Part shown: positions 2,844 through 29,896 of the stretch, in pieces | Layout of the letters: each line of letters begins with the position of its first letter | Numbering within the stretch: the first letter of the stretch is position 1 | Source of the DNA: Prasinococcaceae sp. CCMP 1430 | Lineage: Eukaryota > Plantae > Prasinodermophyta | Direction of reading: 5' to 3' | DNA: 64,000 bases | Assembly (NCBI GenBank): GCA_013416795.1 | Contig: RQSC01000025.1 | Coordinates: 62,001-126,000, forward strand | Made by a program: the position numbers and the translations under genes | Notes under the pieces: model-generated | Told to the model about the DNA's origin: nothing | Databases searched by the model: none | Seen by the model: only the letters and a program-made list of their open reading frames with translations

Positions 2844-2889
2844 TAGTGTTCAGCCTTGCGGAGGGTGCTGTTGTGGCGGGGGTTGAAAA

Positions 2890-2915
2890 GGGGGGGGGGG
2901 GGGGGGGGGGGCCCA

Positions 2916-2967
<52 letters not shown>
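2890..2967 (+). repeat. Interrupted poly-G tract (about 78 nt)
   Basis: G runs interrupted only by 'ccca'. Similar homopolymer tracts lie at about 8040-8072 (C) and 54373-54411 (G). Confidence 0.85.
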
Positions 2968-3400
2968 CTGTGCCACGCGACACAGCCCCGCCCCAACCAC
3001 CCACGCGCGCACGCACGCCACACCGCAAGCGCGCCGCGCGCAGCACGCGCCCGCGGGCGCGCGCCAGAGGCTCTGGATAACACGACCCACATCGTGGCGC
3101 ATGCGGAAGGAGCGAACAAAAGAGGGGCAGGGCTCTCCAAACGCCTTTCGGAACCGCAGAATCGTCCATGCCCAGAAAAGCGATGTCGCGACCGGGAGAT
3201 GATCTATCATTTTAAGTGTTTTACGGTTTAAATTCACAGCACCTTCCCGCGATATTCCGCGCTTTGGGGGAGGTTCGGTCCCGCGCGCAGCCCAGCCGCC
3301 GCCGCGCCGGCGGCCGCGCGGGCGATCGAGCGATCGCGCGCGCCCCGGGAGAGCCCGCCCCCCTCCCATCCCCCTGGATAACCCCTCCCCGGCGGTCGCC

Positions 3401-5834
3401 ATGGGCGCCCCGCGCGACGCGGCCTTCGCGGCCGTGCCGCCGTTCTCGTCGCACGACCCGCTCGCCGAGCTGTGCGAGCGCGTCACTGCGGAGGTCGCCG
3501 ACTTCATCGCCGACAGGAACATCGAGGGCCTCGCCGAGGTGCCCAAGCTTCAGAAGAGCCGCGAGCTCGCAAAGGGCGACTTCGTCATGCTGTGGGCGCC
3601 CTACTGCTCCAGGAATAAGATCAAGCCGCAGGAGTTCACCGCTGAGCTCGCCAAGGACCTGCAGGTGCGCCGCGCGCTCGGCGCGCCGCGGTCGCCCACT
3701 GCGGGCGCCAACCCTAGCGGTGCAGCCCAGCGGCCAGTGGCGGCGGCGGCCGCCGCGAGCGCACGCAGCTATGGGTGCGCGCCATCGCCCGCGGCATGGC
3801 ACGCAGGCAAGCGCGCGTGATCGGTGACGGCCTCCAATTGCGAGCGCTTTGCGCCCTGCCAACGCCCTGCTGACCTCGCGCCGGCGCACCTCCGAACCCG
3901 CTATGGGCCCCCAGGCACATGTCGATGCTGCGGCCGCGGGCGGCGCGGCGCGCTTCGTGTGCAAGGTGGTGGGCGCCGGCCCCTACCTGAATCTGTTTGT
4001 CAACCGCGCGCTCGTGTACTACCTTACGGTGCAGCAGGTGCAGGCGCGCGCCGGAAAGTTCGGCCATGGTGAGGTGCACAAGGGCAAGAAGGTCATCATC
4101 GAGCACACCTCGTCGAACCCGAACGCGCCGCTGCACATCGGCAACCTGCGCAACGTGATGGTGGGCGCGCACATGGCCAAGATGATGTCGGCCGTGGGCT
4201 ACGACGTCAAGCAGCACTTCTACGTGAACGACCTCGGCGCGCAGATTGGCCTGACCGCGCTCGCGTACAGCCGCGTGTACCCGAAGCTCAAGCCCTCCCA
4301 GGGCGTGAAGCGCGACCACTGGATTGGGCAGATGTATGCTGTGATGAACACGTGCTCCGAGCTGCAGAAGGTAGGCGTTGACATTGGTCGCATCGCCGAC
4401 GCCGCGCACGAGTCGCAGGGCGCCGTGGATGAGGTCCAGGAGGCGGCGGTGAAGGCGCTCGAGGGTGACGAGAAGGCGCAGGGCAAGGTGAGGGAGTATG
4501 TGGACATCTTCATGGACCTGCGCTCGCGCTTCGGTGAGATGTTTGAGGTGACCTTGGACACCATGCGTCACGTGCCCAACATTCAGAAGACGTCGGCGGA
4601 GCTCAACCTCGCGTACGAGCGCCAGGAGCCGTGGGCAATCAAGATCTTCCGCAAGATGGTCACCGACTGCCTTTCTGGCGTGACGGAGACACTCAACACG
4701 TACGGCGTGCGCCACGACAGCTTCGACTTTGAGTCTGAGCTCGGCTGGGAGGGCTCGAACGACAAGGTGCTGGAGATCATCAGGTCGTCCCCGTACTACG
4801 TGCCGGAGACACAGTGCAACGAGGAGGGTGTGCCGCAGGGCTCCTACCTCAACATGACCAAATTCATCGCGGACCAGAAGCTGCCCACCGGCAAGAAGGG
4901 CTATCAGAAGGAGTACCCCAACTTCTACGTGCTGCGCCCCGACGGCTCGACGCTGTACACCTTCCGCGACGTGGTGTACTCCTTTAAGAAGGCGTCAAAG
5001 GCCGACATGATCCTCAACGTGATCGCGAGCGAGCAGAACCTGGCGCAGGAGAAGGTGGCACTTGCGATGTACATGGTGGGCGGAAAGCAGATGATCGGCC
5101 GCCAGACGCACCTGACGTACGACATCGTGCGGTTGCCGCACGGCAAGATGAGTGGCCGCCGCGGCCGTTACCTGCTAGCGGATGACCTGTACGAGGAGCT
5201 GAAGGACGTCATCAGGGGCGTGATGCGCGCGAAGTACGACGAAAAGGGCGGCATTGACGAGGCTACCTTCGACGCCGTGACGCACGAGGTGTCGTCGGCA
5301 TCGATGAAGTACGCTCTGCTGAGCGTGGGCGCGCGTGTGCAGGTGACCTTCGACATGAAGAAGGTGACTTCATTCGAGGACGCTTCCGCGCCCTTCATCC
5401 TGTACAACTCCACGCGCGTGGTGAGCCTCCTCAACAAGTTCGCCGAGCGCTCTGCCGCGGGAGATGCGCGCTGCCCGCCGCTGCCGCCAGTCGGCGAGTG
5501 CGACTACTCCACCCTGGACAACCAGGCGGAGTGGGAGCTGCTCATGGACTTTGTGCTGCCCTTCTACAGCATCATCGAGAGCAGCGCATGCCCAACGTTC
5601 CCGCAGCTGCCTGGCCTTCCTGAGTTCAAGACGCACGTCATGTGCGAATACCTGAACTCGTTCACGCGCCGCCTGTCGTCGTACTACAGGAGCGTGCGCA
5701 TCCTGCCGGGCGATGAGCCGGGCACGGGCGGAGGCGATGCCATGCACGCGCGCCTGCAGCTGTGCAAGGCCTTCAAGCAGTGCATCGATAACGGCCTCCG
5801 GCTGCTGATGATCGAGCCGCTAGAGAAGATGTAA
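3401..5834 (+). CDS. argS: Arginyl-tRNA synthetase with archaeal-type motifs; 2 exons
   Basis: Exon 1 is 3401-3664, intron 3665-3914 (gtgcgc...ccccag), exon 2 is 3915-5834. N-terminal GDF...GPYLN domain, HIGH region EHTSSNPNAPLHIGNLRN, LRPDGSTLYTFRD, KMSKS-equivalent GKMSGRRG and a C-terminal anticodon-binding domain. Confidence 0.92.
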
Positions 5835-5966
5835 GCGCTCGTAGGTCGGCGTGCGAGACGGCGGTGGGCGCCGCTCAAGTAGGGACATGTAATGATTGGT
5901 AAGTGAATGGTGATAGCACAGCGGCGATCACTGCCCCCCAGTTTAGAATCGAGCGCCGCGCGGCTC

Positions 5967-7037
5967 TCAGATCTGCTGCGCGACCACGACGGCCATGGTG
6001 CGATCCTTTTTGCTGAACTTGGCCCTCGTCGCCTCCACGTCGACTGCGAACGGCAGCGCCGCGCGCAGCGCACACTCACCCCCAACGTCGAGCGAGATGC
6101 CCGCATCGCTGACGTCCAACGCAACGTCCGCAGCAGATGTACATGCGGGCAGCGCTACCACCATCGCCGCACGGGCTTGGCCGAAGGCGCCAGCAGGCCG
6201 CGGCTCCCAACGATACTCGAGGATCGGCAGCTGCTGCACGGGCTCGCCAAGTTCAACCACCTGCTGCCGCGCGCGCGCCATTGACTCGCTGCCCTGCCGC
6301 CCTCCCTCCCGCTTCTGCGCTCCAGCGCCACTTTCAGCCTCCTCAGGGACGTCCCCGGGCCTTTCGAATGCTCTCGTCACAGCGGCGTTTGAGCTCTGCG
6401 ACTGCGGTACTCTACCCTTGTGGTCTTTCCTGTCCCAGTCGGCGCCTGCTCGCAGCAGCGTGCCGACAGCCTCGGCACTTCCAGAGCGCGCCGCGTCGTG
6501 CAGGGGGGTCGAGCCCTGCCTCGTCGCGGTGTTCACGTCAGCACCGCGCTCGATGAGAACGGCGAGCACGGCTGCGTGCCCCTGCTTGGCCGCGAGGTGC
6601 GCTGCAGTGAGTCCAAGCACGTCCTTCATGTCGACGTGCGCAACGAATCCCGCCCTGGGCGTTGCGGCGGGCGCAATGTGGACCTCGCCGTCCGCGCGCC
6701 AGTCGAGAAGCGCAGCGCACATGTGCGCATGGCCGGCGGCCGCAGCCCTGTGCAGGGGCGTTTGCCGGGCCTTATCCAATGCCGTGAGATCTGCTCTCGC
6801 GCGTAGGAGCACTTCGGCCACCTCGACGCGACCGGCCCACGCCGCCTCGTGCAGCGCCGCCCGCGCGTCCTTATTCTTCAGGTTGGCGTTGGCGCCCCCG
6901 CCGCCGTCTGCGCGCGGCTCTACCAGCCACGCGACAACCCCCGAATGCCCACCCCGCGCGGCTCGGTGCAGCATGGTGTCAAGTCCCTTTGGCTCGCGCT
7001 GGTTCACGTCGAGGCGCTGCTCGGCGACGTATCGCAC
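5967..7037 (-). CDS. Ankyrin-repeat protein with C-terminal CS/PIH1-like domain (5' end undefined)
   Basis: About 5 ankyrin repeats (TMLHRAARGGH, ALHEAAWAGR, TPLHRAAAAGH, TAAHLAAKQGH, TPLHDAARSG). The C-terminus (LPFAVDVEATRAKFSKKDRTMAV) is typical of CS domains. Confidence 0.8.
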   Translation of the reverse strand: MRYVAEQRLDVNQREPKGLDTMLHRAARGGHSGVVAWLVEPRADGGGGANANLKNKDARAALHEAAWAGRVEVAEVLLRARADLTALDKARQTPLHRAAAAGHAHMCAALLDWRADGEVHIAPAATPRAGFVAHVDMKDVLGLTAAHLAAKQGHAAVLAVLIERGADVNTATRQGSTPLHDAARSGSAEAVGTLLRAGADWDRKDHKGRVPQSQSSNAAVTRAFERPGDVPEEAESGAGAQKREGGRQGSESMARARQQVVELGEPVQQLPILEYRWEPRPAGAFGQARAAMVVALPACTSAADVALDVSDAGISLDVGGECALRAALPFAVDVEATRAKFSKKDRTMAVVVAQQI

Positions 7038-7426
7038 GACCTGCTTGAGCTGGCCCTCGGCCGCGGCGAGTGCTGGGCGAACGCGTGCCCGAGCTGCCGC
7101 CCGTCGCCGAGCGACGTCATGACGCGGGTGCGCGGCCGGCCCTGGCCACTCGCAGCTGCAGCTCCCTTATCACCTCCTCCTCCCTCCACCTCTTCACCAA
7201 GGAGGCCTTCGACGGCCCCACCCCCACCCGCCCACGGCCCCGCGCGCGCCCCGCCGCGGCCGCGCCGCTCTGTGGCCGCGCCGCACGCGCGCTCCTTTTC
7301 CTTCTGCTCTGCATACTCTTGCCGCCCGCCGCATGCCACTTGGCGCACCCGCGCCGCCGCGCGCGGGCGCCGCGCGGTGCCACTTGGGGAACCGCACGCG
7401 CGTGCCACCACCAGCATGTCCTGTAC

Positions 7427-27767: not shown

Positions 27768-29896
27768 TCACTGAGCGCAGGCGTGCGAGGGCGCCGCGGT
27801 GGCGCCCGCGCCGCCGGCGTGCCGGCCCTCGCCATCGGCCATCTGGGACCGCGCGAGTGCCACCAGCTCTGCTGCCGCGCCGCCCTCCACGTAGGGCATG
27901 CCGCCGCTCGTCGCAGCCGCGAATTCGCGCACGCTCGACACCGCGAGGGGCATGCCGACCAGCCGGTCGTTGAGGACGACCGTGGCGACGTAGTCGCCGG
28001 GGCGCACCTGCACGCGCTCAGGCCCGTTCGCCGCGCCCATCGCGCTGCCACCGCGCAAAGCCCCCAGGGAGGGCGCCACCGCCAGCTCCTTGGGTATGCG
28101 GATGCCCCGGTTGGTGTTAGAGCGCGCCCACAGCTCGCCCTCCTTGTTGCCGTCCCCCTCGACGAGAGCGAGGTGCACGCGGCCGACCTCCCTCGCGCGT
28201 TGGAGCTCCTCGCCGCGGCGGTACGCAGCAATGATCTCCTCGAGCCGGCGCTGTTTGTCCGAGGCGGGAACGTCGTCCTCGTACTTCCTCGCCGCGTGTG
28301 TTTTGTCCCTGCGGCTGTAGGCGAACAGGAAGGCCGACGCGTACCCCGTGCGCTCGATGAGATCCACCGTGAGGGCGTGGTCGTCCTCGGTCTCGCCACA
28401 GAAGCCTGCGATGAAGTCCGAGGAGATCTCGAGCCCGGGCAAGGCAGCGCGCGCGCGGACCACCAGGGAATCGTACGCCTCTCTCGTGTACCCGCGCCGC
28501 ATGCGCTCCAGCATGCGGCTCGAGCCGCTCTGCGCGGGCAGGTGCAGCATGCGGCCCACGTTCGGGTGGCGGGCTACCACCTCGAGGACGTCGTCACCAA
28601 AGTCCTTGGGGTGAGGACTGGTTGCGCGGAAGGTGATCTCCGGGTGCGCACCCGCCGCCGCGTCCAGCAACCGCGCGAAGGTGAAGCCACCACGCTGCGG
28701 CTTGTACACGGATGTGAAGCCGTCCGCGTAGGCATCAAAGCCCTCAGCGCCGCCCTTCGAGCGGCCGCCGCTCTCGCCGCCCAGGTAGCAGTAGCTGTTG
28801 ACGTTCTGGCCGAGGAGCGTGACCTCTTTGACGCCCTGCCGAGCGAGAGCGTCGATTTCGCCGAGGATGCTCTCTGGATCGCGGGAGCGCTCGCGACCGC
28901 GCACGTATGGCACGATGCAGAACGAGCACATGTTGTTGCACCCTGCAGCCGCACCGCCAGCGAAGAGAGCGCGAAGCGCGCTGGTCAGCATGGGCGCGTG
29001 CGCGCCTCGCACGCGCGGCCAGGGCAGCGCCACGCACCGCGCGTGATGGAGACGAAGGCGCCAACGTCGCCAGCGCGGCGCACGGGCGTCACGTCTGCGT
29101 ATGTTTCCTCGAGCGATAGCTGGACGTTCATGAGGCCCGCACCGGCCAGGCCCGTGCGGCCAGGGGCCGCCAGCGCCGCACCGGCCGCACCCACCAGCCG
29201 CGGAAGGTCCCGGTAGGCGTCGGGGCCCGCCACCACATCCACTAGCCGGTCGCTCTCCAGCAGCTGGCGCTTGAGGCGCTCCGCCATGCAGCCCAGGACG
29301 CCAACGACGGGAGACGCGGGCACACCCTTGCGCTTTGTGCGAACCTTGAGGTTCTTGAAGTAGTTGAGACGCGACAGCACCTTGTCCTCCGCCTTCTCGC
29401 GAATCGCGCACGTGTTGAGCAGCACGACGTCGGCGGTCGTCGGCCCGTCTGCTGCGACCATGCCGGCGTCCGCCAGGACGGAGAGCACCACTTCGCTGTC
29501 GGCTTTGTTCATCTGACAACCATAGGTCTCCACCCACAGCGAGCGGCGCTCCAGCCATCGCTGCGGGAGTTCCGTCGGCGAGAGCGGTGCGCCTGCGCCA
29601 AATCCCGTGCCCGCCCCCGTGCCCGCGCCGCCCGCGCCGCCCGCGCGCCCGTCGCCGCCAACGAAGTCGGCGAGCGTCTTGCCGTCCTTGGGCAGCTGCC
29701 GCGAGCGCGCGCCGGCGCCAGCGGTGGAAAAGCTCGCGGCCGCCGCCGCCCTCACCCTAGCAATTGCGGCGGCCATAGACCTCTCAGCGGTGGCAGCGCC
29801 CACCGCTGCGCCGCCCGCCGCGCCGCCTGCTGCTCCAGCCGCTGCGCGCAGCCGCCTCGCCGCCGAGCATGCGCTGAGCGCAGCTCTGCGCCGCAT
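27768..29896 (-). CDS. miaB: tRNA 2-methylthiotransferase (MiaB/CDK5RAP1), radical SAM; 2 exons
   Basis: UPF0004 domain ([27 protein letters not shown]), intron 29037-28943, [21 protein letters not shown] cluster motif, [28 protein letters not shown] and a TRAM-like tail. Confidence 0.92.

What the first reader, a model, noticed from the sequence alone, without database searches (positions are those of the whole stretch)
3401..5834. Nuclear, intron-containing arginyl-tRNA synthetase with archaeal-type signature motifs
The HIGH region reads IIEHTSSNPNAPLHIGNLRN, followed by YVNDLG, KRDHWIGQMY, VIASEQ and HLTYDIVRLPHGKMSGRRG. From my recollection of the family, EHTS-x-NP, K-x-DH-x-IG-x-x-Y and KMS-x-RRG typify archaeal-type ArgRS. 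Typical eukaryotic cytosolic enzymes have DFSSPNIAK…KFKTR, and typical bacterial ones have EYVSANP. The spliceosomal intron shows it is integrated in the nuclear genome, so it may be a horizontally acquired or rarely retained ArgRS lineage.
Basis: partly seen in the sequence, partly recalled or inferred. Interest (0 to 1): 0.7.

Follow-up and report, generated by a model that had tools for sequence, protein, structure and literature searches.

The report
Archaeal-type arginyl-tRNA synthetase in green alga
The marine green picoalga Prasinoderma coloniale has an expressed, intron-containing nuclear gene for an arginine-tRNA-charging enzyme of archaeal rather than the usual eukaryotic type, and many early-branching green algae and several unrelated protists share it, so it looks like an old, patchily kept eukaryotic gene and not a recent import.

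Summary
Window 3401-5834 (+) is a two-exon gene: exon 1 3401-3664, GT-AG intron 3665-3914, exon 2 3915-5834. Its 727-aa product is identical to Prasinoderma coloniale PRCOL_00001416. RNA contigs from three studies skip exactly the 250-nt intron.

All quoted motifs are present. The protein is a complete ArgRS: TIGR00456 above cut-off, AlphaFold pLDDT 93.9, and Pyrococcus horikoshii ArgRS as best solved match. It is 23% identical to E. coli ArgS, which carries GDYQ and APNVAKEMHVGHLRS; Igloi 2021 reports GDYQ for the usual cytosolic type too.

It is not a private acquisition of Prasinoderma. Relatives at 37-87% identity occur in:
- green algae: P. singulare, Mamiellophyceae (including Bathycoccus), Chloropicon, Cymbomonas, Mesostigma
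- five metamonad groups
- Pygsuia, Diphylleia and Vermistella

In a site-heterogeneous ML tree these form one clade (100/100). They share insertions that all 46 archaeal rows lack. The clade is sister to Baldrarchaeia/Asgardarchaeia ArgRS (100/99), and the best prokaryote is only about 32% identical. The green algae are one subclade (97/90).

Best reading: an ancient Asgard-related eukaryotic ArgRS lineage, probably cytosolic, lost in most eukaryotes. I found no paper describing it. Whether P. coloniale also has the usual type could not be tested.

The parts
3361..3400 (+). 5' untranslated leader (minimum extent)
   Evidence: The RNA-run contig X1 starts at 3361 and continues into the coding sequence. 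There is no in-frame ATG upstream back to the stop at 3200.
3401..3664 (+). Exon 1 coding part (aa 1-88): most of the N-terminal additional domain, including the GDF motif at aa 59-61
   Evidence: Homologous to the N-termini of full-length relatives. NF002446 aligns from residue 26. AlphaFold pLDDT exceeds 90 from about residue 11.
3665..3914 (+). Spliceosomal intron, 250 nt, GT..AG, phase 0
   Evidence: Skipped exactly in contigs of three RNA runs from three studies and kept in a DNA-like run. ORFs on P. singulare-like genomic contigs run into intron-like sequence at the same position.
3915..5834 (+). Exon 2 coding part (aa 89-727 plus stop): catalytic Rossmann domain and DALR anticodon-binding domain
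   Evidence: ORF listing; Pfam tRNA-synt_1d and DALR_1; TIGR00456 above cut-off.
4101..4145 (+). EHTSSNPN...HIGN: arginine/ATP-site signature (HIGH-type motif, aa 151-165)
   Evidence: E151, H152, T153, S154, N156, P157, H162 and G164 are invariant in 55 eukaryotic and archaeal relatives. Coordinates.
4350..4517 (+). Helical insertion in the catalytic domain, longer than in TACK archaea
   Evidence: Segment length is 35-42 aa in TACK, 26 in E. coli, at least 45 (median 54) in eukaryotes, 61-72 in the Baldr/Asgardarchaeia group and about 101 in Njord. It is helical in the model.
4803..4844 (+). Region lengthened in the eukaryotic clade (PETQCNEEGVPQGS)
   Evidence: Alignment A1. The FESEL-to-RPDGS segment has a median of 67 aa in eukaryotes against 60 in TACK.
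4950..4970 (+). TLYTFRD: conserved Y..RD arginine-pocket motif (aa 434-440)
   Evidence: Y436, R439 and D440 are invariant in 55 relatives.
5145..5165 (+). KMSGRRG: KMSKS-type loop (aa 499-505)
   Evidence: M500, S501 and G502 are nearly invariant and R503 is invariant. Aligns with the corresponding loop (GKFSGRKG) of P. horikoshii ArgRS.
5397..5831 (+). DALR anticodon-binding domain
   Evidence: Pfam PF05746, full-length match 1-117/117.
5580..5636 (+). Insertion in the DALR domain specific to the eukaryotic clade (about 11 aa extra)
   Evidence: The EW-to-YLN segment is exactly 30 aa in all 46 archaeal rows and in E. coli, and has a median of 41 in the 32 eukaryotic rows (seen in A1).

Best explanation
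The region is the expressed nuclear gene PRCOL_00001416 of Prasinoderma coloniale. It encodes a complete and, by all sequence criteria, active class I arginyl-tRNA synthetase.

Mechanism (inferred from family knowledge). The N-terminal additional domain and the C-terminal DALR helix bundle hold tRNA-Arg. The Rossmann domain carries the EHTS-x-NP/HIGN and KMSGR loops and the Y..RD pocket. It binds arginine and ATP and transfers arginine to the tRNA.

Ancestry (shown). The enzyme is of the TACK/Asgard archaeal type, not the E. coli-like type that Igloi 2021 links through the GDYQ motif to the usual eukaryotic cytosolic enzyme. It belongs to a eukaryote-only clade marked by its own insertions, and that clade is sister to Baldrarchaeia/Asgardarchaeia enzymes. 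The clade holds early-diverging members of all three green phyla, which form one subclade. It also holds five metamonad groups (Parabasalia, Preaxostyla, Anaeramoeba, barthelonids, skoliomonads), a breviate, Diphylleia and an amoebozoan.

History (inferred). The gene was already in the common ancestor of green plants. It most likely goes back to the archaeal side of the first eukaryotes. Most lineages later kept only the bacterial-like enzyme.

Location (inferred). The protein has no room for a transit peptide, so it probably charges cytosolic tRNA-Arg, and a second enzyme or another route must serve the plastid and mitochondrion.
For: Gene model and expression:
- The spliced product equals the annotated protein.
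- The 250-nt GT-AG intron is skipped in RNA contigs from three studies, including marine metatranscriptomes.
- ORFs on P. singulare-like genomic contigs run into intron-like sequence at the same position.

Enzyme identity:
- Pfam tRNA-synt_1d 61 bits and DALR_1 56.5 bits.
- TIGR00456 273.6 bits against a cut-off of 261.65. NF002446 aligns end to end at 380.5 bits.
- 33 invariant columns across 55 eukaryotic and archaeal relatives include the E-H-T-S-x-N-P, H..G, Y..RD, Q and R503 positions.
- AlphaFold model pLDDT 93.9, pTM 0.92.
- Best Foldseek match is the P. horikoshii ArgRS-tRNA complex 2zue_A (E 1e-32, TM 0.70/0.80). The 20 best matches are all ArgRS chains.

Archaeal type:
- PDB phmmer gives P. 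horikoshii 138 bits against T. thermophilus 90, yeast 88, and human and E. coli 54.
- 23% identity to E. coli ArgS, which has GDYQ and APNVAKEMHVGHLRS.
- The best prokaryotes are Asgard and TACK archaea at 27-32% identity.

Clade:
- IQ-TREE LG+C20+F+G4 (PMSF), 79 rows by 643 columns, E. coli outgroup.
- Eukaryotes 100/100; eukaryotes plus Baldr/Asgardarchaeia 100/99; TACK 98/98; green algae 97/90.
- Holding eukaryotes with TACK is rejected, AU p 0.0014.
- Insertions shared by all eukaryotic rows and absent from 46 archaeal rows.

Distribution.

Cytosolic location:
- Only about 17 residues precede the conserved domain.
- No upstream in-frame ATG, and the RNA-run contig X1 starts 40 nt before the ATG.
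- Igloi 2021 lists one ArgRS type for each amitochondriate Monocercomonoides and Tritrichomonas. He describes it as atypical, which fits this type.
Against: - No sequence of the usual eukaryotic cytosolic or mitochondrial type could be put in the tree. E. coli ArgS stood in for it.
- Loki-, Heimdall-, Hod- and Thorarchaeial ArgRS did not surface in any search. The Asgard sister group is therefore Baldr/Asgardarchaeia, not the group usually placed next to eukaryotes. Njordarchaeia branch elsewhere.
- The eukaryotic stem is long (1.14 changes per column).
- The order inside the eukaryotic clade does not follow accepted supergroups. Metamonada as one clade is rejected (AU p 0.0021), and Preaxostyla group with Vermistella-like sequences (97/96). 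This leaves room for eukaryote-to-eukaryote transfer.
- NF002446 falls short of its curated cut-off (380.5 against 399).
- Pfam does not detect Arg_tRNA_synt_N in the first 130 residues.
- Activity, substrate tRNAs and location are untested.
- Whether P. coloniale has a second ArgRS is unknown.
Confidence: 0.72

Rival explanations
1. The gene entered eukaryotes after their last common ancestor. One protist took it from a Baldr- or TACK-like archaeon, and it then spread between eukaryotes, including once into the ancestor of green plants.
For: - The distribution is patchy, and many holders are anaerobic protists, among which transfers are documented. One example is the archaeal-type SmsCB shared by BaSk metamonads, Pygsuia and others (PMC11316075).
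- The gene tree rejects monophyly of Metamonada (AU p 0.0021).
- It joins Preaxostyla with an amoebozoan-containing group at 97/96, and the green algae with Diphylleia only weakly at 87/60.
- The Asgard sister group is not Heimdallarchaeia.
Against: - There is one eukaryotic clade with shared insertions and a long stem. No prokaryote is closer than about 32% identity.
- Holders span Archaeplastida, Metamonada, Obazoa, CRuMs and Amoebozoa, and include aerobes.
- The recognised groups Parabasalia, Preaxostyla, Anaeramoeba, BaSk and green algae are each monophyletic.
- The basal order Parabasalia, then BaSk (sister to Fornicata, PMC13087550 abstract), is partly like the published excavate-root order (PMC10146883 abstract).
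- No viral relative that could act as a vehicle was found in IMG/VR.
Confidence: 0.25
2. Prasinoderma, or its genus, took the gene directly and recently from an archaeon.
Against: - The best archaeal identity is about 32%, against 37-87% to other eukaryotes.
- The protein is nested in the green subclade of a eukaryote-only clade.
- It carries the eukaryote-specific insertions.
- It has host-like GC content (about 0.59-0.71 across the gene) and a spliced intron, with intron-like sequence at the same position in P. singulare-like genomic contigs.
Confidence: 0.01
3. The enzyme is the organellar ArgRS of the alga, imported into the plastid and/or mitochondrion, while a usual-type enzyme serves the cytosol.
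For: Plastid and mitochondrion translate and need an ArgRS. Igloi 2022 lists a 'cytosolic-type' ArgRS for Bathycoccus, Micromonas and Ostreococcus. Two types may therefore coexist in such algae.
Against: - Only about 17 residues precede the folded N-terminal domain, and there is no upstream in-frame ATG.
- Most green homologues start about 95 residues before the GxGPYLN motif without any extension.
- The same type is present in metamonads without organellar translation, and Igloi 2021 lists only one ArgRS type for each.
Confidence: 0.1
4. The stretch is a contaminant or assembly artefact, not part of the algal nuclear genome.
For: None found.
Against: - The same locus with the same neighbours lies on an independent contig of another strain at 98.7% identity, and on contigs of a DNA-like run.
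- The intron is spliced.
- GC content matches the flanks.
- The gene is annotated in the published proteome.
Confidence: 0.01

Closest known systems
Archaeal ArgRS of the TACK/Asgard type (NCBIfam NF002446); solved example Pyrococcus horikoshii ArgRS-tRNA complex, PDB 2zue
   Same: The domain order is the same, and the alignment to NF002446 runs end to end. The signatures EHTS-x-NP..H-I/V-G-N/H, YVND-x-G-x-Q, K-x-D-x-WIG..YA, NVI..EQ and KMSGR-x-G are shared. 2zue is also the best structural match.
   Different: Identity is only 27-32%, and the NF002446 score is 380.5 against a cut-off of 399. The window protein has extra segments in the catalytic and DALR domains that are found only in the eukaryotic clade. 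It is encoded by an intron-containing nuclear gene.
ArgRS of Preaxostyla and Parabasalia (Monocercomonoides exilis KAH7818144.1, Tritrichomonas foetus OHT07319.1), classed 'Mito' or 'Mito?' by motif in Igloi 2021 (PMC8318970)
   Same: They belong to the same eukaryote-only clade (42-44% identity), with the same insertions and motifs.
   Different: Those organisms have no organellar translation. The published classification as mitochondrion-derived is not what the tree here shows, if these are the same genes. I could not match the accession numbers.
Usual eukaryotic cytosolic ArgRS (human RARS1, PDB 4r3z/4zaj). Igloi 2021 links it to E. coli ArgS (4oby) through the GDYQ motif, and PMC8879553 regards it as bacterial in origin.
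   Same: Same enzyme family and fold (TM 0.60-0.65). Presumably the same reaction.
   Different: Identity to E. coli ArgS is 23% and the PDB score is 54 bits, against 138 for the archaeal enzyme. The window protein has EHTSSNPNAPLHIGN where E. coli has APNVAKEMHVGH.
Yeast ArgRS (PDB 1bs2/1f7u), of the mitochondrion-derived lineage according to Igloi 2021
   Same: Same fold (TM 0.65-0.69) and the same E..N and Y..D pocket spacing (my recollection of the yeast structure, not tested).
   Different: 88 bits against 138 for P. horikoshii. No yeast-type sequence could be placed in the tree.

Membership tests
Arginyl-tRNA synthetase (class I aaRS; TIGR00456, Pfam PF00750 + PF05746) | Class I (R) catalytic Rossmann domain | tested here: met
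   PF00750 61.1 bits against a cut-off of 23.3. Only the first ~84 profile positions give the best stretch, but NF002446 and TIGR00456 cover the rest.
Arginyl-tRNA synthetase (class I aaRS; TIGR00456, Pfam PF00750 + PF05746) | C-terminal DALR anticodon-binding domain | tested here: met
   PF05746 56.5 bits against a cut-off of 22.3, profile positions 1-117 of 117.
Arginyl-tRNA synthetase (class I aaRS; TIGR00456, Pfam PF00750 + PF05746) | Whole-protein equivalog score above the curated cut-off | tested here: met
   TIGR00456 273.6 bits against 261.65.
Arginyl-tRNA synthetase (class I aaRS; TIGR00456, Pfam PF00750 + PF05746) | HIGH-type and KMSKS-type loops and arginine-pocket residues conserved | tested here: met
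   HIGN at aa 162-165 and KMSGR at aa 499-503. E151, N156, Y436, D440, Q462/Q466 and R503 are invariant in 55 relatives. Which residue touches which ligand is from recollection of the yeast and archaeal structures.
Arginyl-tRNA synthetase (class I aaRS; TIGR00456, Pfam PF00750 + PF05746) | N-terminal additional domain (Arg_tRNA_synt_N, PF03485) | tested here: inconclusive
   No Pfam hit even at E 1 for residues 1-130. However, NF002446 aligns from residue 26 to profile position 7. The region folds at pLDDT above 90, and the Foldseek alignment to 2zue spans 752 columns. The domain was not compared on its own.
Arginyl-tRNA synthetase (class I aaRS; TIGR00456, Pfam PF00750 + PF05746) | Overall fold of solved ArgRS | tested here: met
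   The 20 best Foldseek matches are all ArgRS chains, with E from 1e-32 to 8e-17. The next matches are MetRS and CysRS at E 2.5e-7 or worse.
Arginyl-tRNA synthetase (class I aaRS; TIGR00456, Pfam PF00750 + PF05746) | ATP- and tRNA-dependent arginylation of tRNA-Arg | not testable with these tools
   Needs an enzyme assay.
Archaeal TACK/Asgard-type ArgRS (NCBIfam NF002446 equivalog) | Score at or above the curated cut-off of 399 bits | tested here: not met
   380.5 bits for the full protein. M. exilis scores 349 and T. foetus 382.5. Asgardarchaeia score 595 and Baldrarchaeia 665, so they pass. The eukaryotic clade is a diverged relative, not a plain member.
Archaeal TACK/Asgard-type ArgRS (NCBIfam NF002446 equivalog) | Branches with archaeal ArgRS of this type in a tree | tested here: met
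   Sister to Baldr/Asgardarchaeia at 100/99. The alternative with TACK is rejected, AU p 0.0014. That group was chosen after the tree had been seen.
Usual eukaryotic cytosolic ArgRS (RARS1 / E. coli-like type) | GDYQ motif and an S-x-PN-x-AK-x-x-HVGHLRS signature | tested here: not met
   The window protein has KGDF and EHTSSNPNAPLHIGNLRN. E. coli ArgS has GDYQ and APNVAKEMHVGHLRS. Identity is 23%. Human chains score 54 bits.
Eukaryotic mitochondrion-derived ArgRS (five-residue deletion plus MSTR motif, Igloi) | Five-residue deletion before an MSTR-like motif, and descent from the myxobacterial-like lineage | tested here: inconclusive
   No sequence of this type could be aligned here. The motif here is KMSGR. 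Yeast ArgRS scores 88 bits against 138 for the archaeal enzyme. Igloi notes that the deletion is missing in Tritrichomonas and Histomonas.

The most novel reading that the evidence does not exclude
This clade is the ArgRS that the Asgard-related host brought into the first eukaryotes. On this reading, the last eukaryotic common ancestor carried it alongside the bacterial-like enzyme that became the standard cytosolic ArgRS. Early green lineages, most metamonad groups, breviates, CRuMs and some amoebozoans still keep the original. The green-plant ancestor would then have had both types, and core chlorophytes and land plants lost the archaeal one. The branching order inside the clade (Parabasalia first, then the BaSk group, then Anaeramoeba) would be one more gene of archaeal ancestry bearing on where the eukaryotic root lies.
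Probability: 0.45. Interest if true: 0.75.

Novelty: new variant of a known kind. Interest (0 to 1): 0.6.

Why it matters
Papers in the held library treat both human ArgRS genes as bacterial in origin (PMC8879553). They sort eukaryotic ArgRS into just two kinds, 'cytosolic' and 'mitochondrial', by motif (Igloi 2021 and 2022). Under that scheme the enzymes of oxymonads and trichomonads were called mitochondrion-derived, and all algal enzymes were called cytosolic-type.

The data here point to a third kind: Asgard-related, eukaryote-wide and patchy. It is present in very abundant marine picoalgae such as Bathycoccus.

If the lineage is old, it is a rare surviving piece of the host's translation machinery. 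It then gives a concrete case for testing how one essential enzyme was replaced by another in most, but not all, eukaryotes.

It also raises practical questions. Which tRNA-Arg pools does each enzyme serve in algae with three translating compartments? And in parasites such as Tritrichomonas, is this enzyme a selective drug target because it differs from the host's?

Tried and rejected
- **A false lead on splicing.** The Logan protein P0001 starts MDLQAHVD, which looked like a spliced junction. Its contig L001 turned out to be genomic DNA of another strain (98.7% identity). The 'MDLQ' is the 3' end of the intron in that strain. It was dropped as splicing evidence and replaced by the RNA contigs.
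- **Viral vehicle.** A scan of IMG/VR with the alignment found no viral relative.
- **ESM Atlas feature search.** It returned ArgRS clusters from all domains at equal scores and does not discriminate.
- **Second ArgRS in the same genome.** Earlier notes of this scan mention none. No tool lets me search this genome or proteome with a usual-type query, so the paralogue inventory was not done.
- **Usual eukaryotic ArgRS sequences for the tree.** None could be fetched without typing them, so E. coli ArgS (L082) served as stand-in and outgroup.
- **Other Asgard ArgRS.** Searches seeded with the Asgardarchaeia and Njord proteins returned only Baldr-, Njord- and TACK-labelled proteins.
- **Matching Igloi's genes to mine by accession.** His supplement gives contig numbers only.
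- **tRNA-Arg genes in the window, to look at position 20.** There are none, only one tRNA-Trp.
- **The large profile search** (search of protein representatives) was not run. The operators flagged its cost, and the word search already showed close eukaryotic and distant archaeal relatives.
- **Literature.** Nine full-text searches found no paper describing an archaeal or Asgard-type ArgRS in eukaryotes. The library lacks most subscription journals, so this is not proof of absence.
Full report
**1. What is in the sequence**

The window is GC-rich, about 0.59-0.72 over its first 12 kb. On the + strand an ATG at 3401 opens a reading frame of 88 codons, with context GCCATGG. There is no in-frame ATG back to the stop at 3200. 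The frame runs to a GT at 3665.

A second frame opens after CCCCAG at 3914 and runs from 3915 to a stop at 5832-5834. Joined, the two give 727 residues. This product is letter for letter the EukProt protein PRCOL_00001416-RA of Prasinoderma coloniale (P0121). The window is therefore nuclear DNA of that marine green picoalga (Prasinodermophyta).

**2. The intron is real and the gene is expressed**

I laid contigs of four public runs on 3300-5900.
- One contig from each of three RNA runs, from three different studies, skips exactly 250 nt with GT..AG ends. One run is culture-like and labelled only 'organism A'. The other two are marine metatranscriptomes.
- The joint is reported as 3661->3912 with an equally good cut three bases on. 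That is 3664|3915.
- A DNA-like run reads through the intron.
- The culture-like contig starts at 3361, 40 nt before the ATG.

In the P. singulare-like cluster, two genomic ORFs read ...LAKDLQ and then on into intron-like sequence. An uninterrupted 722-aa ORF of the same cluster reads LAKDLQAHVDAQ across the junction. The intron position therefore appears to be shared with that relative.

An early lead was wrong. A Logan protein starting MDLQAHVD is not a spliced form. It comes from the genomic contig of another strain, 98.7% identical, whose intron happens to end that way.

**3. It is a complete ArgRS**

- Pfam finds the class I (R) catalytic domain and a full DALR domain.
- TIGR00456 scores 273.6 bits against a cut-off of 261.65.
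- NF002446 aligns residues 26-727 to profile positions 7-636 of 636 at 380.5 bits, just under its cut-off of 399.
- In an alignment of 55 eukaryotic and archaeal relatives, 33 columns are invariant. They include E151, H152, T153, S154, N156, P157, H162, G164, Y436, R439, D440, Q462, Q466 and R503. These are the HIGH-type loop, the Y..RD pocket and the KMSGR loop.
- The AlphaFold model built on that alignment has mean pLDDT 93.9 and pTM 0.92.
- Its best Foldseek match in the PDB is the Pyrococcus horikoshii ArgRS-tRNA complex 2zue_A (E 1e-32, TM 0.70/0.80). The 20 best matches are all ArgRS chains. MetRS and CysRS follow at E 2.5e-7 or worse.

The reaction, tRNA-dependent activation of arginine and its transfer to tRNA-Arg, is inferred from family membership and was not tested.

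**4. It is of the archaeal type**

- Against PDB sequences, P. horikoshii scores 138 bits, T. thermophilus 90, yeast 88, and human and E. coli about 54.
- The window protein is 23% identical to E. coli ArgS. That enzyme carries GDYQ and APNVAKEMHVGHLRS. Igloi 2021 describes the GDYQ motif as shared between E. coli and the usual eukaryotic cytosolic enzyme (PMC8318970).
- In one-genome-per-species prokaryotic contigs, the 80 best relatives are 27-32% identical. Nearly all are labelled as TACK archaea (Bathyarchaeia, Desulfurococcales, Thermofilaceae, Sulfolobales, Methanomethylicia) or Asgard archaea (Baldr-, Njordarchaeota, Promethearchaeati).
- Two contigs labelled as bacteria (L010, L032) fall among Bathyarchaeia sequences; L010 is almost identical to the Bathyarchaeota contig L006. 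Both look like binning errors.

**5. It is not private to Prasinoderma**

The word search over 5.8 billion proteins gave 89 eukaryote-type hits ahead of the first archaeon. Names came from that call and from cluster look-ups.

| Group | Organism | Identity or accession |
|---|---|---|
| Green algae | P. singulare | 87% |
| Green algae | Mamiellaceae sp. RCC2288 and many marine metagenome clusters | about 60-63% |
| Green algae | Bathycoccus prasinos | CAL6419428.1 |
| Green algae | Chloropicon primus | 58% |
| Green algae | Cymbomonas tetramitiformis | KAK3271573.1 |
| Streptophyte | Mesostigma viride | 63% |
| CRuMs | Diphylleia rotans | 56% |
| Breviate | Pygsuia biforma | 54% |
| Amoebozoa | Vermistella antarctica | 48% |
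| Metamonada | Anaeramoeba ignava and A. flamelloides | 52% and 48% |
| Metamonada | Paratrimastix pyriformis | 46% |
| Metamonada | Blattamonas nauphoetae | 45% |
| Metamonada | Monocercomonoides exilis | 44% |
| Metamonada | Barthelona sp. PCE | 43% |
| Metamonada | Tritrichomonas foetus | 42% |
| Metamonada | Skoliomonas sp. TZLM3-RCL | 37% (named in PMC11316075) |

The list then drops to Asgardarchaeia at 32%. No land-plant or core-chlorophyte protein is among the eukaryote-type hits. Such proteomes abound in the database, so this argues that they lack the type. The search scored only the 8,000 candidates sharing most words, however, so this is an inference.

**6. Trees**

A first FastTree of 173 rows already gave one eukaryotic clade next to an Asgard group.

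I then ran a careful IQ-TREE (LG+C20+F+G4 by PMSF) on 79 rows by 643 columns. The rows were 32 eukaryotes, 46 archaea and E. coli as outgroup. Support is given as ultrafast bootstrap / SH-aLRT.
- Eukaryotes: 100/100, stem length 1.14.
- Eukaryotes plus a group of Baldrarchaeia, Asgardarchaeia and kin: 100/99.
- TACK: 98/98.
- Njordarchaeia branch separately near the root.
- The green algae form one subclade at 97/90. It holds Chloropicon, Prasinoderma, Mesostigma and Mamiellophyceae.

The order inside the eukaryotic clade is Parabasalia, then Barthelona plus Skoliomonas, then Anaeramoeba, then Pygsuia. After that come two groups: Preaxostyla with Vermistella-like sequences, and Diphylleia with the green algae.

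AU tests gave two results.
- Holding eukaryotes with TACK costs 20.9 log-likelihood units, p 0.0014. That group was chosen after the tree had been seen.
- Holding the eight named metamonads as one clade costs 37.0 units, p 0.0021.

**7. Insertions agree with the tree**

| Segment | Archaea (46 rows) | E. coli | Eukaryotes (32 rows) |
|---|---|---|---|
| EW to YLN motifs (DALR domain) | exactly 30 in every row | 30 | median 41 |
| SAPF to EW | 30-37 | 33 | 40-46 |
| Helical insert, YAxMN to DLxxR | TACK 35-42; Baldr/Asgardarchaeia 61-72; Njord about 101 | 26 | at least 45, median 54 |

The first two are marks of a single origin of the eukaryotic clade. The third is soft support for the Asgard link.

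**8. How I read it**

*Shown:*
- an expressed, spliced nuclear ArgRS gene of archaeal type
- membership of a eukaryote-only clade
- an Asgard (Baldr/Asgardarchaeia) sister group
- presence in early-diverging members of all three green phyla as one subclade

*Inferred:*
- The gene was in the common ancestor of green plants and was lost in core chlorophytes and in streptophytes above Mesostigma.
- The clade goes back to the archaeal partner of the first eukaryotes, or to a very early transfer from an Asgard archaeon, with many later losses.

The main rival is a later single import followed by spread between eukaryotes. The odd internal order and the many anaerobic holders speak for it. The breadth of holders, the monophyly of each recognised group and the lack of any close prokaryote speak against it. 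The paraphyly of metamonads at the base could be a long-branch effect. It could also reflect the 'excavate root', in which Parabasalia branch first (PMC10146883 abstract).

A direct recent import into Prasinoderma is excluded.

**9. Where it works**

Only about 17 residues precede the folded N-terminal domain. No upstream ATG is available. Most green homologues start at the same point. The few longer database entries look like gene-caller read-through of leader sequence.

The same type is present in metamonads that have no organellar translation. Igloi 2021 lists one ArgRS type for each of Monocercomonoides, Streblomastix, Tritrichomonas and Histomonas. He describes them as atypical, with a barely discernible GDYQ and an MSTR-like motif with a reduced or absent five-residue deletion. 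He classed them as 'Mito' or 'Mito?'.

I therefore think the P. coloniale enzyme is cytosolic. I could not test whether a second, usual-type ArgRS serves its plastid and mitochondrion. Igloi 2022 lists one 'cytosolic-type' ArgRS each for Bathycoccus, Micromonas and Ostreococcus, but I cannot tell which gene that is.

**10. Novelty**

The gene is annotated, and its relatives are named arginine-tRNA ligase. As an enzyme it is known. What I did not find in nine full-text searches is any description of an archaeal or Asgard-related ArgRS lineage in eukaryotes.
- PMC8879553 lists both human ArgRS genes as bacterial in origin.
- Igloi's surveys use a two-type scheme and call all algal enzymes cytosolic-type.
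- The viral aaRS study does not mention such a lineage.

The library lacks most subscription journals, for example Brindefalk 2007 and Furukawa 2017, which I could not read. Prior description elsewhere remains possible.

**11. Limits**

- No usual-type eukaryotic sequences are in the tree.
- Asgard sampling is limited to Baldr-, Asgard- and Njordarchaeia.
- Several rows have a deviating amino-acid make-up.
- One AU group was chosen after the tree had been seen.
- No activity or localisation data exist.

Noticed in passing
window 2846-3202: A long GGN/CCN-type tract just upstream of the ArgRS leader. ORFs on both strands read it as runs of poly-Gly or poly-Pro. It may be promoter-proximal low-complexity DNA or part of the neighbouring gene.
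   Followed up: no
window 5967-7037 (-): A convergent neighbour gene with ankyrin repeats and a PIH1_CS domain (Pfam marks on the equivalent gene of L001). Its stop lies only 132 nt from the ArgRS stop, so the 3' untranslated regions probably overlap.
   Followed up: partly
window 28992-29084 (-): A tRNA-Trp(CCA) gene 93 nt long, which is long enough to hold an intron. There is no tRNA-Arg gene in the window.
   Followed up: no
L001 against window 3355-7249; window 4148, 4598, 4742, 4829, 5168, 5468: Strain variation. An independent genomic contig is 98.7% identical over 3.9 kb. Marine metatranscriptome contigs differ from the window at six positions in the coding region.
   Followed up: partly
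P0058 (M. exilis), P0068 (T. foetus): The ArgRS of oxymonads and trichomonads, classed as mitochondrion-derived by motif in Igloi 2021, appears to be this archaeal-type enzyme. The accession numbers could not be matched.
   Followed up: partly
L010, L032, L005, L035: Several contigs carry labels that disagree with their place in the tree, which suggests binning errors or transfers. Contigs labelled Krumholzibacteriaceae (L010) and Patescibacteria (L032) carry ArgRS genes that fall among Bathyarchaeia sequences; L010 is almost identical to the Bathyarchaeota contig L006. A 'Thermoprotei' contig (L005) groups with Asgardarchaeia. A 'Thermoplasmatota' contig (L035) groups with Bathyarchaeia.
   Followed up: no
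P0024 and P0406 (Mesostigma viride Mv01924): There are two annotated isoforms of 631 and 714 aa. The shorter one has a C-terminus that does not align with any relative and lacks most of the DALR domain.
   Followed up: no
P0046, P0057 clusters (marine Mamiellophyceae, incl. Bathycoccus): Prokaryote-style gene calls of 468-533 aa lie on contigs of up to 360 kb, beside an annotated 733-aa Bathycoccus protein. This suggests the gene is split by at least one intron in these algae too.
   Followed up: no
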